Assembly: GCF_039654945.1 (NCBI RefSeq)
Contig: NW_027361804.1
Span: 6,510,001-6,574,000, forward strand
Source: Dendrobates tinctorius
Taxonomy: Eukaryota
DNA length: 64,000 nucleotides
Direction: 5' to 3'
Part shown: positions 25,101 through 32,219 of the stretch, in pieces
Layout of the letters: each line of letters opens with the position of its first letter
Numbering within the stretch: the first letter of the stretch is position 1
Notes under the pieces: model-generated
The model's database searches: none
Seen by the model: the letters and a program-made list of their open reading frames with translations, nothing else
What the model was told of the DNA's origin: nothing
Made by a program: the position numbers and the translations under genes

Positions 25101-27485
25101 TGTATGGGTACAGGACATTAGAGGGGCACAGGTAGGGTATATGGGCACATGAGTACATTAGAGGGGTACAGGTAGGGTATATGGGCACATGAGTACATTA
25201 GAGGGGTACAAGTAGGGTATATGGGTACAGGAGTACACTAGAGGGGCACAGGTAGGGTGTATGGGTACAGGAGTGCACTAGAGGGGCACAGGTAGGGTAT
25301 ATGGGTACAGGAGCACATTAGAGGGGCACAGTTAGGGTGTATGGGTACAGGACATTAGAGGGGCACAGGTAGGGTATATGGGCACATGAGCACATTAGAG
25401 GGGCACAGGTAGGGTGTATGGGTACAGGAGCACATTAGAGGGGTACAGGTAGGGTATATGGGCACATGAGTACAATAGAGGGGTACAGGTAGGGTATATG
25501 GGTACAGGAGTACACTAGAGGGGCACAGGTAGGGTGTATGGGTACAGGAGTACACTAGAGGGGCACAGGTAGGGTGTATGGGTACAGGAGCACATTAGAG
25601 GGGCACAGGTAGGGTGTATGGGTACAGGAGTACATTAGAGGGGTACAGGTAGGGTATATGGGCACATGAGTACATTAGAGGGGTACAGGTAGGGTATATG
25701 GGTACAGGAGTACACTAGAGGGGCACAGGTAGGGTGTATGGGTACAGGAGTACACTAGAGGGGCACAGGTAGGGTATATGGGTACAGGAGCACATTAGAG
25801 GGGCACAGGTAGGGTGTATGGGTACAGGAGCACATTAGAGGGGCACAGGTAGGGTGTATGGGTACAGGAATACATTAGAGGGGCACAGGTAGGGTATATG
25901 GGTACAGGAGTACATCAGAGGGGCACAGGTAGGGTATATGGGTACAGGAGTACACTAGAGGGGCACAGGTAGGGTATATGGGCACATGAGTACATTAGAG
26001 GGGTACAGGTAGGGTATATGGGTACAGGAGTACATCAGAGGGGCACAGGTAGGGTATATGGGTACAGGAGTACATTAGAGGGGCACAGGTAGGGTATATG
26101 GACACATGAGTACATTAGAGGGGTACAGGTAGGGTATATGGGTACAGGAGTACACTAGAGGGGCACAGGTAGGGTATATGGGTACAGTAGCACATTAGAG
26201 GGGCACAGGTAGGGTGTATGGGTACAGGAGCACATTAGAGGGGCACAGGTAGGGTATATGGGTACATGAGTACATTAGAGGGGCACAAGTAGGGTGTATG
26301 GGTACAGGAGTACACTAGAGGCGCACAGGTAGGGTGTATGGGTACAGGAGTACACTAGAGGCGCACAGGTAGGGTGTATGGGTACAGGAGTACATTAGAG
26401 GGGCACAGGTAGGGTATATGGGTACAGGAGCACATTAGAGGGGCACAGGTAGGGTGTATGGGTACAGGAGTACATTAGAGGGGCACATGTAGGGTATATG
26501 GGTACAGGAGTACATTAGAGGGGCACAGGTAGGGTGTATGGGTACAGGAGTACATTAGAGGGGCACAGGTAGGGTGTATGGGTAAAGGAGCACATTAGAG
26601 GGGCACAGGTAAGGTGTATAGGTACAGGAGTACATTAGAGGGGCACAGGTAGGGTATATGGGTACATGAGTACATTAGAGGGGCACAGGTAGGGTATATG
26701 GGTACAGGAGCACATTAGAGGGGCACAGGTAGGGTGTATGGGTACATGAGTACATTAGAGGGGAACATGTAGGGTATATGGGTACAGGAGTACATTAGAG
26801 GGGCACATGTAGGGTGTATGGGTACAGGAGTACATTAGAGGGGCACAGGTAGGGTATATGGGTACAGGAGTACACTAGAGGGGCACAGGTAGGGTGTATG
26901 GGTACAGGAGTACATTAGAGGGGCACAGGTAGGGTGTATGGGTACAGGAGTACACTAGAGGCGCACAGGTAGGGTGTATGGGTACAGGAGTACATTAGAG
27001 GGGCACAGGTAGGGTATATGGGTACAGGAGTACACTAGAGGGGCACAGGTAGGGTGTATGGGTACAGGAGTACATTAGAGGGGCACAGGTAGGGTGTATG
27101 GGTACAGGAGTACACTAGAGGCGCACAGGTAGGGTGTATGGGTACAGGAGTACATTAGAGGGGAAGAGGTAGAGTATATGGGTACAGAGTACATTAGAGG
27201 GGCAGAGGTAGGGTATATGGGTTCAGGAGTACACTAGAGGGGCACAGGTAGGGTGTATGGGCACAGGAGTACATTAGAGGGGCAGAGGTAGAGTATATGG
27301 GTACAGAGTACATTAGAGGGGCACAGGTAGGGTATATGGGTACAGAGTACAGTAGGGGGGTAGAGGTAGAGTATATGGGTACAGGAGTACATTAGAGGGG
27401 CAGAGGTAGAGTATATGGGTACAGAGTACATTAGAGGGGCACAGGTAGGGTATATGGGTACAGGAGCACATAAGAGGGGCACAAG
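16187..27485 (+). repeat. 11.3-kb G-rich 37/40-bp satellite (GGGTACAGGAGTACATTAGAGGGGCACAGGTAGGGTRTAT), ~290 copies
   Basis: Direct periodicity with variant units; in intron 1. Confidence 0.98.
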
Positions 27486-27560
27486 TCAGGTATAGGGTGG
27501 GTTATGGGTGGCATCAGTCGGCGGGTTTGCGGATGTCTTATATAAGGGCACCAGTATGTA

Positions 27561-29021
27561 CAGTACAGACCAAACGTTTGGACACACCTTATTCAAAGAG
27601 TTTTCTTTATTTTCATGACTATGAAAATTGTAGATTCACTCTGAAGGCATCAAAACTATGAATTACCACATGTGGGATTATATCATTAACAAAAAAGTGT
27701 GGAACAACTGAAAATATGTCTTATATTCTAGGTTCTTCAAAGTAGCCACCTTTTGCTTTGATTACTGCTTTGCACACTCTTGGCATTCTCTTGATGAGCT
27801 TTAAGAGGTAGTCACCAGAAATGGTTTTCACTTCACAGGTGTGCCCTGTCAGGTTTAATAAGTGGGATTTCTCGCCTTATAAATGAGGTTGGGACCATCA
27901 GTTGTGCTGTGCAGAAGTCTGGTGGATACACAGGTGATAGTCCTACTGAATAGACTGTTAGCTGTTTTTTTCTTGCCATAATACAAATTCTAAGTAAAGA
28001 AAAACATGTGGCCATCATTACTTTAAGACGTGAAGGTCAGCCAGTCCGAAAAATTGGGAAAACTTTGAAAGTGTCCCCAAGTGCAGTGGCAAAAACAATC
28101 AAGAGCTACAAAGAAACTGGCTCACATGAGGACCGGCCCAGGAAAGGAAGACCAAGAGTCACCTCTGCCGCGGAGGATAAGTTCATCCGAGTCACCAGCC
28201 TCAGAAATCGCAGGTTATCAGCAGCTCAGATTAGAGACCAGGTCAATGCCACACACAGTTCTAGCAGCAGACACATCTCTACAAAAATTGTTCAGAGGAG
28301 ACTTTGTGCAGCAGGCCTTCATGGTAAAATAGCTGCTAGGAAACCACTGCTAAGGACAGGCAACAAGAAGAAGAGAATTGTTTGGGCTAAAGAACACAAG
28401 GAATGGACATTAAACCAGTGGAAATCTGTGCTTTGGTCTGATGAGTCCAAATTTGACATCTTTGGTTCCAAATACCATGTCTTTGTGCTACGCAGAAAAG
28501 GTGAACGGATGGACTCTACATGCCTGGTTCCCACCGTGAAGCATGGAGGAGGAGGTGTGATGGTGTGGGGGGGCTTTGCTGGTGACACTGTTGGGGATTT
28601 ATTCAAAATTGAAGGCATACTGAACCAGCATGGCTACCACAGCATCTTGCAGCGGCATGCTATTCCATCCAGTTTGCGTTTAGTTGGACCACCATTTATT
28701 TCTCAACAGGACAATGACCCCAAACACACCTCCAGGCCATGTAAGGGCTATTTGACCAAGAAGGAGAGTGATGGGGTGCTACGCCAGATGACCTGGCCTC
28801 CACAGTCACCAGACCTGAACCCAATCGAGATGGTTTGGGGTGAGCTGGACCGCAGAGCGAAGGCAAAAGGGCCAACAAGTGCTAAGCATCTCTGGGAAAT
28901 CCTTCAAGACTGTTGGAAGACCATTTCCGGTGATGCTTCAGAATGAATCTACAATTTTCGTAGTCATGAAAATGAAAACTCTTTGAATGAGAAGGTGTGT
29001 CCAAACTTTTGGTCTGTAATG
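27561..29021 (+). mobile_element. Tc1-like DNA transposon with DD38E spacing (Intruder type), long TIRs, disabled
   Basis: Ends TA|CAGTACAGACCAAA...TTTGGTCTGTAATG. Transposase frame 28008-28946 has GRPR, WSDESKF and QQD-38 aa-E (SPDLNPIE). The start codon is inverted and the right TIR has an internal deletion. Located in KCNQ1-like intron 1. Confidence 0.93.
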
Positions 29022-29464
29022 TTCATCCGGGGGGCACAGAGCCCATCTTGCGGGGGATTATTAGGGAACACATCTGTAATATTGTGGGTTTAGGGCGCGA
29101 GGGGCACAGTATGCTGACTGTATACTGGTGTCGCTGGTGTCGGGAGTGGATCTGCATGGCGACACTGTGTTAAGTACAGGACTCGGGCCCTCGCTGTGTG
29201 TAACGTTAGATTAGAACAACTGTAACCTGTGAATAAAAGATGAAGAGATCAGGACACGGCTAATCCGAGCGGCGCGGTGTGTCAGGGTGAGGCACATGAC
29301 AGGCAGCCCTGACAGACGGACAGCACAGACACACAACACGCTCCCCTGACAGCCGGACGGCACAGACACACAACACGCTGCCCAGACAGACGGACAGCAC
29401 AGACACACAACACGTTGCCCTGACTGACATGGAGGACACAATAACACCAATGCAATAACATGAG

Positions 29465-31345
29465 CACTACAACCCCCAACACGATCCAACCACTGGACAC
29501 GGCCGTACACTACAACCCCCAACACGATCCAACCACTGGACACGACCGTACACTACAACCCCCATGATCCAACCATTGGACACAACCGTACACTACAACC
29601 CCCAACACGATCCAACCACTGGACACGACCGTACACTACAACCCCCATGATCCAACCATTGGACACAACCGTACACTACAACCCCCAACATGATCCTACC
29701 ACTGGACACGACCGTACACTACAACTCCAAACATGATCCAACCACTGGACACGAACAAACACTACAACCTCCAACATGATCGGACCAATGGACACGACTG
29801 TACACTACAACCCCCAACATAGTCCGACCACTGAACATGACCGTACACAACCCCCAATATAGTCCGACCACTGGACATGACCGTACACAACCTCCAATAT
29901 AGTCCGACCACTGGACATGACCGTACATTACAACCCCCAACATGATCAGACCACTGGACACGACCGTACACTACAACCCCCAACATAGTCCGACCACTGG
30001 ATACGACCTTACACTACAACACCCAACATGATCAGACTACTGGACATGACCATACACTACAACCCCCAACATGATCAGACCACTGGACACGACCGTACAC
30101 CACAACACCCAACATGATCAGACCGCTGGACACGACCATACATTACAACCCCCAACATGATCCTACCACTGGACACAACCGTACACCACAACACCCAACA
30201 TGATACAACCACTGGACACGACCGTACCCCACAACACCCAACATGATCCGCCCACTGGACACGACTGCACATTACAACCCTCAACATGATCAGACCACTG
30301 GACACGACCACACATTACAACCCTCAACATGATCCGACCACTGGACACAACCATACACTACAACACCCAACATGATCCTACCACTGGACACGACCGTACC
30401 CCACAATACCCAACATGATCCGACCACTGGACACAACCATACACTACAACACCCAACATGATCCGACCACTGGACACGACCGTACCCCACAACACCCAAC
30501 ATGATCCGACCACTGGACACAACCATACACTACAACCCTCAACATGATCCTACCACTGGACACAACCGTACACCACAACACCCAACATGATACAACCACT
30601 GGACACGACCGTACCCCACAACACCCAACATGATCCGCCCACTGGACACGACTGCACATTACAACCCTCAACATGATCCGACCACTGGACACAACCATAC
30701 ACTACAACACCCAACATGATACAACCACTGGACATGACCGTACCCCACAACACACAACATGATCCGACCACTGGACACAACCATACACTACAACCCTCAA
30801 CATGATCCTACCACTGGACACAACCGTACACCACAACACCCAACATGATACAACCACTGGACATGACCGTACCCCACAACACCCAACATGATCCGCCCAC
30901 TGGACACGACTGCACATTACAACCCTCAACATGATCAGACCACTGGACACGACCACACACTACAACCCCCAACATGATGCGACCACTGGACACAACCGTA
31001 CACCACACCACCCAACATGATCCAACCACTGGACACGACCGTACCCCACAACACCCAACATAATCCTCCCACTGAACACGACTGCACATTACAACTCTCA
31101 ACATGATCCTACCACTGGATACAACCGTACACCACCCAACATGATCCAACCACTGGACACGACCGTACCCCACAACACCCAACATGATCCGCCCACTGGA
31201 CACGACCACACACTACAACCCTCAACATGATCCGACCACTGGACACAACCATACACTACAACCCTCAACATGATCAGACCACTGGACACGACCGTACACT
31301 ACAACCCCCCAACATGATCCAACCACTAGACACGACCACACACCA
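29465..31345 (+). repeat. 43-bp tandem array (CACTACAACCCCCAACATGATCCGACCACTGGACACGACCGTA), ~44 copies
   Basis: Direct periodicity; preceded by a few short GACAGCACAGACACACAACACG repeats at ~29310-29425. Confidence 0.95.
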
Positions 31346-32219
31346 CAATGCCCAATGTGGTAGAAAGTTGCACCATATAATGATATTTGGGGGACTGGCC
31401 CTTTAAATGTAACAAAATCAATAATTGACAATGAAGCGATGGCTCCAACACCCTGAGCTCTTAATCACTGCACCATCCTCCCGCTATAATCCAAGGGTTC
31501 GGTGCCAGGTCCAGTCTGTGTCCATCTGTCATGGGGCACCGGATTTTATAGGTGGTAATTATGACTATAACAGAAAACTAAGCCTCAAACAAGCAGAAAA
31601 GCCCCTTATGAGGGCAGAATGACAACAAGCTGGTACAGGAACCAGCAAAGCTGCAGTGTAAAGTATGAGGGAGCTGCCGCCTGATCCTATGATGAGACTG
31701 CAGCTGACACATTAGTGGCTATAACAGGACCTCAATGTAATTCTCTGTTTCCCCACCGGAGGCGCTGCAGAGTCTCCCACCTGGGTCACGGCAGATCACT
31801 GTGGTACTGATACTCCCATCGTCTCCTGCTGTGGAGCGCCATTACAGCGGCTGCTCCCTGGCGCTCAGCCCTGTCTGAGCTGTGAACTCGCACAACATTA
31901 AATCTTAATCTGTTTCCATTTTTGCAAAGTATCTTGGATGGTAATTATAAGGTATCACGGATCCTGTGGCGCCACTCCGAGAAAATAGTCATCATCTGTA
32001 ACCACTACAACTCCTAGTATTTCCTGACAGCCACACCATGAAGACTACTAGCCCAACAGTGTAAGTTCCATAGAGGCCCATGGCGGAGGGTCCCGATCCA
32101 CAACCACATCCCCTGCCTGCCCTGATGCTCATAGCAGTAACTGCTGCTGCCACTGAGGGGAGCTCAAGAGATTTATACACCTGCCAATGAATCTAATAAC
32201 AGCTGTATACATTCATGTA

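What the first reader, a model, noticed from the sequence alone, without database searches (positions are those of the whole stretch)
27958..28010. 30-bp micro-inversion flips the transposase start codon (an off-switch in a DD38E element)
Seen: 27961-27990 (GCTGTTTTTTTCTTGCCATAATACAAATTC) lies between the inverted 4-mers TTAG (27958-27961) and CTAA (27990-27993). Reversing it gives ATG GCA AGA AAA AAA CAG CTA AGT AAA GAA AAA CAT GTG GCC... = MARKKQLSKEKHVAIITL, exactly in frame with the ORF at 28008. This explains the stray minus-strand MARKKQL peptide. Inference: a template-switch inversion silenced the element without losing sequence. It could mark a non-autonomous subfamily, or be reversible.
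Basis: seen in the sequence. Interest (0 to 1): 0.7.

Follow-up and report, generated by a model that had tools for sequence, protein, structure and literature searches.

The report
Inverted start codon in frog transposon
A 28-letter stretch holding the start codon of a fish-derived "jumping gene" (Intruder/Tc1 type) is turned end-for-end in this decayed copy, and the same flip is found in other copies in two poison-frog genomes, so it is an inherited knock-out mark of a lineage of copies, not a working on/off switch.

Summary
Window 27962-27989 is the reverse complement (27 of 28 letters) of the segment that holds the ATG in intact relatives. It lies between the 4-letter inverted repeats TTAG (27958-27961) and CTAA (27990-27993), and both flanks stay collinear. 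Turned back, it gives MARKKQLSKEK..., the N-terminus of intact 350-aa DD38E (Intruder) transposases in fish and frogs.

It is not a one-off. The same inversion with the same breakpoints is in a Ranitomeya imitator copy (L006, different flanks). A Phyllobates terribilis gene model (P0023) reads it through as SCFFLAIIQILSKEK. This scan also noted it on another piece of this genome (s1-377017, unchecked). Seven other DNA copies are canonical.

Best reading: a replication or repair copying error between the short inverted repeats removed the start codon in an ancestral copy. That ATG-less copy kept its ends and was spread in trans.

One complication remains. Seven marker sites put the window copy outside the clade that holds L006, so recurrence or copy-to-copy conversion is possible, but an AU test does not reject a single origin (p 0.18).

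Nothing supports a reversible switch: the repeats are only 4 bp, there is no hairpin, and this copy is dead (163-bp deletion, about 3% private changes).

The parts
27559..27560 (.). 5' TA target-site duplication
   Evidence: TA directly before CAGTACAGACC. L006 and L001 show TA at their element ends.
27561..27831 (+). 5' terminal inverted repeat (about 270 bp). Its inner part is the reverse complement of the transposase C-terminal coding region (minus ORF 27721-27831, ...ISGDYLLKLIKRMPRVCKAVIKAKGGYFEEPRI).
   Evidence: The arms are about 270 bp and 93-96% alike in full-length relatives.
27958..27961 (.). Left 4-nt inverted-repeat arm TTAG (break point hidden within it)
27962..27989 (-). Inverted 28-nt core. 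It holds the ancestral 5' leader end, the ATG (now on the minus strand at 27979-27977) and codons 2-6 (ARKKQ).
   Evidence: 27/28 identical to L001 as reverse complement, 13/28 directly. Seven other DNA copies carry the opposite orientation.
27990..27993 (.). Right 4-nt inverted-repeat arm CTAA
27954..28946 (+). Remaining transposase frame, open but with no ATG before residue ~185 of this frame (GERMDSTC). It reads TVSCFFLAIIQILSKEKHVAIITL... through the inverted segment. Catalytic codons are D 28440, D 28710 and E 28827.
   Evidence: Pfam HTH_Tnp_Tc3_2 and HTH_23 pass their cut-offs; DDE_3 scores 27.6 bits, just under its 28.6 cut-off.
28934..28935 (.). Junction of a 163-bp deletion that removed the last 29 codons, the stop codon and the inner part of the 3' repeat
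   Evidence: Alignment with 1618-1627-bp copies
28936..29021 (+). Remaining outer part of the 3' terminal inverted repeat (ends GGTCTGTAATG, one change from GGTCTGTACTG)
29022..29023 (.). Degenerate 3' target-site duplication (TT instead of TA)
   Evidence: read directly

Best explanation
Window 27561-29021 is a dead copy of a DD38E (Intruder-type) Tc1/mariner DNA transposon. This family entered frogs from fish. In an ancestral frog copy, a copying error during replication or break repair turned the 28 nt between the short inverted repeats TTAG and CTAA end-for-end. The mechanism could be template switching or microhomology-mediated break-induced replication. The error put the ATG and the first six codons on the wrong strand, so that copy could no longer make transposase. 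It kept both 270-bp terminal repeats and could still be moved by transposase made by intact copies. It therefore left descendants: this window copy, a copy in Ranitomeya imitator, one in Phyllobates terribilis and apparently another in this genome. Shown here: the inversion, its ancestral direction, its presence in independent insertions in at least two other genomes, and the loss of the start codon. Inferred: the copying-error mechanism, spread in trans, and a single origin. The inversion is a fixed lesion, not a switch.
For: Inversion and polarity: (27/28 as reverse complement, collinear flanks). Fish and frog relatives start MARKKQLSKEKR. Seven DNA copies are canonical: L001, L002, L003 (two copies), L004, L005 and L007. 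Shared lesion: L006 (R. imitator) reads GACTGTTAG-CTGCTTTTTTCCTGCCATAAAACAAATT-CTAAG, with the same break points and different flanking DNA. P0023 (P. terribilis) reads SCFFLAIIQILSKEKRVAIITL, which only the inverted state encodes. Among copies not picked for their start, 2 of 8 are inverted. That is far too many for private post-insertion events, given a published micro-inversion rate of about 2e-13 per nt per generation (PMC8755829). Size (28 nt) and directly abutting short inverted repeats match described micro-inversions of 17-33 nt with 3-75-nt flanking repeats. A canonical copy offers 246 alternative 4-bp repeat pairs, so independent hits on the same pair are unlikely. The AU test does not reject the two inverted DNA copies forming one clade (p 0.176).
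Against: Seven marker sites (window 28170, 28172, 28184, 28413, 28910, 28949, 28979) group the window copy with the canonical fish-type L001. They group L006 with the canonical frog copies. That clade has 88/97 support, and the inversion needs two changes on the best tree. A single origin therefore needs copy-to-copy sequence exchange, which is documented for Tc1 in C. elegans (Fischer et al. 2003, cited in PMC9635669) but is not shown here. Only nine DNA copies were available. Transposition of inverted copies in trans is inferred, not observed. P0023 is evidence at protein level only; its DNA could not be fetched.
Confidence: 0.68

Rival explanations
1. Recurrent, independent micro-inversions at a mutational hot spot: the TTAG/CTAA pair around the start codon flips repeatedly in different copies or subfamilies. 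The window copy and the R. imitator / P. terribilis copies would then be separate events.
For: The four-gamete conflict: both the inverted and the canonical state occur on both marker backgrounds. The best tree needs two changes. The clade that separates the two inverted DNA copies has 88/97 support. Copy numbers of Tc1-type elements in poison frogs reach tens of thousands (PMC6278860), so there are many targets.
Against: Identical break points at one of 246 equivalent 4-bp repeat pairs. The background micro-inversion rate is very low. No hairpin or quasi-palindrome would make this site special: folding energies are no better than shuffles, with z +0.6 to +2.0. The AU test does not reject a single clade (p 0.176). 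A frequency of 2 in 8 unselected copies is too high for post-insertion events.
Confidence: 0.2
2. A reversible on/off switch: the segment flips back and forth at a locus and regulates transposase expression.
For: Only indirect: the orientation is homoplastic on the small copy tree, and the inversion conserves sequence, so it could in principle be undone.
Against: The repeat arms are 4 bp, far below any known recombinase site. A 28-bp spacer is too short to loop for recombination (argument in PMC8755829). The DNA forms no stable hairpin. No recombinase is associated with the element. The window copy is dead for other reasons, a 163-bp deletion and 2.96% private changes, so a switch would have nothing to switch here. 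Within the inverted segment the copies have drifted independently (1 and 2 private changes), as expected of a fixed old state.
Confidence: 0.03
3. Assembly or sequencing artefact at this position.
For: None found. Reads could not be examined.
Against: The same inverted state is present in three independent assemblies or annotations: the window, GCA_958301615.1 and GCA_046119375.1. There are no Ns and no other irregularity at the site.
Confidence: 0.01

Closest known systems
Intruder (IT, DD38E) family of Tc1/mariner transposons (Gao et al. 2020, PMC7731502)
   Same: DD38E catalytic spacing. Full-length relatives are 1618-1627 bp with about 270-bp terminal inverted repeats, TA target duplication and a 350-aa transposase with paired-like HTH domains. 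The family is found in ray-finned fish and Anura with very high cross-taxon identity, indicating horizontal transfer.
   Different: The paper does not mention inversions or non-autonomous lineages (0 occurrences of either word). The window copy lacks a start codon and the last 29 codons.
Short-range template-switch mutations and micro-inversions between short inverted repeats (PMC5453318, PMC8604942, PMC8755829)
   Same: A precise reverse-complement copy of a 28-nt spacer, with directly abutting short inverted repeats and no loss or gain of letters. The size lies within the described 17-33-nt range.
   Different: Described cases are single-locus events between species or lineages. Here the event sits in a mobile element, has been copied to several loci and species, and removes a start codon.
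Non-autonomous derivatives of DNA transposons (internal-deletion derivatives, MITEs)
   Same: A copy that cannot make transposase but keeps both terminal repeats, and is present as several independent insertions.
   Different: The founding lesion is a sequence-conserving micro-inversion of the start codon, not an internal deletion. The element keeps nearly full length.
Programmed invertible promoter/start switches of bacteria (Hin, Fim, shufflons)
   Same: Only the outcome: inverting a short DNA segment separates a gene from its start.
   Different: Those need a site-specific recombinase, longer inverted repeats and a segment of hundreds of bp, and both states coexist at one locus. None of this is seen here.

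Membership tests
DD38E / Intruder (Tc1/mariner) | Catalytic triad D, D, E with 38 residues between the second D and the E | tested here: met
   Spacing is 89 and 38 residues in both the window frame and P0001. Codons lie at 28440, 28710 and 28827.
DD38E / Intruder (Tc1/mariner) | Element of 1.5-1.7 kb with one transposase ORF of 341-379 aa between terminal inverted repeats (short <100 bp or long 100-272 bp) | tested here: met
   Relatives are 1618-1627 bp with 270-bp arms. P0001 is 350 aa. The window copy is 1461 bp because of a 163-bp deletion. Criteria are taken from PMC7731502.
DD38E / Intruder (Tc1/mariner) | TA target-site duplication | tested here: inconclusive
   There is a TA at the 5' end (27559-27560). 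The 3' side reads TT (29022-23), which would be one substitution from TA. L006 and L001 have TA.
DD38E / Intruder (Tc1/mariner) | Placement inside the IT clade in a transposase phylogeny with reference families | not tested
   No reference IT, TR, IC or Tc1 sequences were placed in a tree. Pfam: HTH_Tnp_Tc3_2 and HTH_23 pass their cut-offs; DDE_3 falls just below its own (27.6 vs 28.6 bits).
Micro-inversion by template switching / MMBIR at short inverted repeats | Segment is the exact or near-exact reverse complement of the ancestral sequence, with collinear flanks | tested here: met
   27/28 as reverse complement; flanks identical column by column. Polarity comes from fish and frog canonical copies.
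Micro-inversion by template switching / MMBIR at short inverted repeats | Inverted repeats directly abutting both break points | tested here: met
   TTAG and CTAA are directly adjacent. The chance of 4 matching bp at fixed positions is 1/256. The published range is 3-75 nt.
Micro-inversion by template switching / MMBIR at short inverted repeats | Which of the two mechanisms (replication template switch or break repair) produced it | not testable with these tools
   Both leave the same product. PMC8755829 argues that 3-4-nt arms favour break repair.
Non-autonomous transposon lineage | The same disabling lesion in several independent insertions (different flanks, different genomes) | tested here: met
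   The window, L006 (different flanks, R. imitator) and P0023 (P. terribilis). Scan note s1-377017 is unchecked.
Non-autonomous transposon lineage | Members form one lineage on the copy tree (single founder) | tested here: inconclusive
   The best tree separates the window copy and L006 (88/97). The AU test does not reject them as one clade (p 0.176).
Non-autonomous transposon lineage | Mobilisation in trans by transposase from intact copies | not testable with these tools
   Inferred from intact terminal repeats in L006 and from the several insertions.
Programmed invertible DNA switch | Recombinase-size inverted repeats and an associated recombinase | tested here: not met
   The arms are only 4 bp. 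The only protein domains are transposase HTH and DDE.
Programmed invertible DNA switch | Both orientations coexisting at one locus | not testable with these tools

The most novel reading that the evidence does not exclude
The ATG-less, start-inverted form is a major, long-lived non-autonomous lineage of Intruder across poison frogs, perhaps a quarter of all copies. It has kept exchanging sequence with, or has arisen repeatedly from, the autonomous lineage. If so, a sequence-conserving micro-inversion rather than a deletion founded a successful parasite-of-the-parasite that may have damped the invasion of this fish-derived transposon.
Probability: 0.15. Interest if true: 0.5.

Novelty: new member of a known kind. 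Interest (0 to 1): 0.3.

Why it matters
This is a clean, datable example of a known small-scale mutation type, a micro-inversion between very short inverted repeats. Because it happened inside a mobile element, it was copied to several loci and species. That makes it a near homoplasy-free marker for tracing one lineage of a horizontally transferred transposon through poison-frog genomes. It also gives a way to measure sequence exchange between dispersed copies. A practical point: the inverted state opens the frame upstream, and annotation pipelines fuse it into chimeric 'proteins' such as P0023. It does not reveal a new regulatory mechanism.

Tried and rejected
**Reads test.** No test of both states at this locus was possible.

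**Census through the minus-strand 61-aa ORF.** This ORF stays open in both orientations, but no such short ORFs are in the protein collection.

**Region-restricted protein search with the read-through N-terminus.** It found only P0023.

**Exact DNA pattern scans.** I scanned for both states, and for the inverted junction alone, in metagenome, genome and viral collections. All were blank, as expected for collections that are mainly microbial. A protein-based scan of viral contigs was also blank.

**DNA of the P0023 copy.** It was not retrievable because the gene range exceeds 100 kb. P0035 is not on record.

**Shared exact ORFs as handles to pull more copies.** Only short out-of-frame ORFs are shared, so I did not pursue this.

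**Hairpin or quasi-palindrome hot spot.** Rejected; folding is no better than shuffles.

**The '45-aa deletion' RTGNKK|GERMD as a second marker.** It appears in five frog gene models. I rejected it because the DNA of those copies has no deletion; it is a predicted intron.

**Site 27817 (A in both inverted copies) as a linked marker.** I treat it as weak, because it is a CpG-to-CpA change and the outgroup contig starts one base later.

**Species of the window.** It could not be established from shared repeats.

**Rfam.** Nothing in 27000-29600.

Full report
**1. What is at the site**

TTAG is at 27958-27961, CTAA is at 27990-27993, and 28 nt (27962-27989) lie between them.

The site is inside a Tc1/mariner element that spans 27561-29021. 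This is the only copy in the window.

The outer terminal repeats are 27561-27646 and 28936-29021. The 5' repeat continues to about 27831. It contains, on the minus strand, the end of the transposase reading frame (ORF 27721-27831...ISGDYLLKLIKRMPRVCKAVIKAKGGYFEEPRI).

The plus-strand frame 27954-28946 is open. It gives Pfam hits to HTH_Tnp_Tc3_2 and HTH_23, which pass their cut-offs, and to DDE_3, which at 27.6 bits falls just below its 28.6 cut-off. Its catalytic residues are spaced D-89-D-38-E, so it is a DD38E element.

A 40-bp minisatellite (to 27498) and a 43-bp minisatellite (from 29465) flank the insertion.

**2. The inversion is real and its direction is known**

The closest full-length relative is P0001, 350 aa, starting MARKKQLSKEKRVAIITL. 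I fetched its DNA as L001.

In the alignment the flanks match column by column and only the stretch between TTAG and CTAA fails. That stretch matches at 13/28 directly and at 27/28 as reverse complement.

The cluster of P0001 consists of fish proteins (turbot, Mastacembelus). All members with an N-terminus start MARKKQ... or MARTNQ.... The canonical orientation is therefore ancestral and the window state is derived.

In the window the ATG is on the minus strand (27979-27977). The plus frame reads TVSCFFLAIIQILSKEKHVAIITL with no ATG until about residue 185 of that frame. No full transposase can be made from this form.

**3. It is not a one-off**

Frog gene models among the hits gave access to frog DNA.

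- *Canonical copies.* Five Phyllobates terribilis copies (L002, two in L003, L004, L005) and one Ranitomeya imitator copy (L007) are canonical. L002 has a 6-bp deletion that removes the ATG.
- *Inverted copy in R. imitator.* L006 carries the same inversion with the same break points: GACTGTTAG-CTGCTTTTTTCCTGCCATAAAACAAATT-CTAAG. Its flanking DNA is different from the window's.
- *Inverted copy in P. terribilis.* The protein P0023 reads ...SCFFLAIIQILSKEKRVAIITL..., which only the inverted state encodes. Its DNA could not be fetched.
- *Earlier scan note.* Note s1-377017 reports the same start-codon micro-inversion on another piece of this genome. I could not check it.

Counting only copies that were not picked for their start, 2 of 8 are inverted.

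Micro-inversions arise at about 2e-13 per nt per generation in apes (PMC8755829). A variant this common must therefore have been inherited by copying, not acquired separately by each copy after insertion.

An ATG-less copy with intact ends can only have been moved by transposase from other copies. That makes this a non-autonomous lineage. This step is inferred.

**4. One origin or several?**

I masked the inverted segment and aligned nine copies.

Seven sites (28170, 28172, 28184, 28413, 28910, 28949, 28979) group the window copy with the fish-type L001. They group L006 with the canonical frog copies. At the protein level P0023 also has the frog-type SAS state.

The frog clade has 88/97 support, and the inversion needs two changes on the best tree. 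However, the AU test does not reject the two inverted copies forming one clade (delta lnL 10.9, p 0.176).

Several points argue against independent recurrence:
- the break points are identical, at one of 246 equivalent 4-bp repeat pairs;
- there is no hairpin propensity;
- the background rate is low.

Sequence exchange between dispersed Tc1 copies is documented in C. elegans (Fischer et al. 2003, cited in PMC9635669). In this family, two of the marker changes occur as mirror pairs in both terminal repeats (27603/28979 and 27633/28949), which shows that homogenisation does operate here.

My estimate is about two-thirds for a single origin with later exchange, and about one-fifth for recurrence.

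**5. Mechanism**

The product is a precise reverse-complement copy of a 28-nt spacer between abutting 4-nt inverted repeats. That is the signature of short-range template switching (PMC5453318, PMC8604942) or of microhomology-mediated break-induced replication. The latter has been proposed specifically for micro-inversions with very short arms (PMC8755829).

The two mechanisms cannot be told apart from the product.

Recombination across the repeats is excluded on physical grounds for a 28-bp spacer.

**6. Not a switch**

- The arms are 4 bp and no recombinase is present.
- No stable DNA structure forms at the site.
- The segment has drifted independently in the two inverted DNA copies (1 and 2 private changes).
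- The window copy is dead for other reasons. It has a 163-bp deletion after 28934 that removes the last 29 codons and the inner 3' repeat. It also has 2.96% private substitutions, the highest of the nine copies.

**7. Comparison with what is known**

The element meets the published criteria for Intruder/DD38E: spacing, length, long terminal repeats and ORF size (PMC7731502). I did not place it in a reference phylogeny.

The fish and frog copies are 95-96% identical in DNA. That fits the known horizontal transfer of Tc1-type elements between fish and poison frogs, and their copy numbers of tens of thousands (PMC6278860).

Micro-inversions and non-autonomous transposon derivatives are both well known. 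What is less usual is a micro-inversion of the start codon, rather than a deletion, as the founding lesion of a lineage that spread.

I found no paper describing this. A search for 'microinversion' with 'transposase' and 'non-autonomous' returned no listed paper containing the word 'microinversion'.

**8. Verdict**

The inversion, the loss of the start codon and the subfamily marker hold. The off-switch and reversibility ideas do not.
- It is a tidy and useful marker and a good textbook case, but not a new mechanism. Interest is 0.3.

Noticed in passing
window 27561-27831 and relatives L002-L007: The 270-bp terminal repeats include the last ~30 codons of the transposase ORF, so the 5' arm carries a minus-strand copy of the C-terminus. 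Two of the sites that separate the window/L001 type from the frog type are changed as mirror pairs in both arms (27603 with 28979, 27633 with 28949). This suggests arm-to-arm homogenisation or co-selection of transposase binding sites.
   Followed up: partly
L006:15218-15950: The inverted R. imitator copy is interrupted 23 bp downstream of the inversion by a ~733-bp insert. The insert begins TGTTG and ends ATGACA and is flanked by a 6-bp duplication GTGGCC. It looks like a solo LTR.
   Followed up: no
P0015, P0018, P0023, P0049, P0056 (P. terribilis gene models); L002-L005: Five annotated 'proteins' built on copies of this transposon all skip the same 135 nt (RTGNKK|GERMD), although the DNA has no deletion. 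The skipped piece would be a GC-AG intron. Several models (P0023, P0014, P0035) are chimeras of transposon ORF and host exons, so they are likely annotation artefacts or exonised transposon pieces.
   Followed up: partly
L001 versus L002-L007 and window 27561-29021: A contig whose protein clusters with turbot and spiny-eel proteins is 95-96% identical in DNA to the poison-frog copies. That is as close as the frog copies are to each other, which is consistent with recent fish-frog horizontal transfer of this Intruder lineage. 'Vibrio parahaemolyticus' proteins in the same clusters (P0006, P0136-P0149) are evidently fish DNA contamination in bacterial assemblies.
   Followed up: partly
window 25500-27498 and 29465-31355: The transposon sits between two different long minisatellite arrays. 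One has a 40-bp unit (at least 50 copies, 92% matches). The other has a 43-bp unit (44 copies, 84% matches).
   Followed up: no
L002:13640-13670: A canonical P. terribilis copy lost its ATG in a different way, through a 6-bp deletion (TGGCAA) inside the same segment. So the start codon has been knocked out at least twice in this family by different lesions.
   Followed up: no
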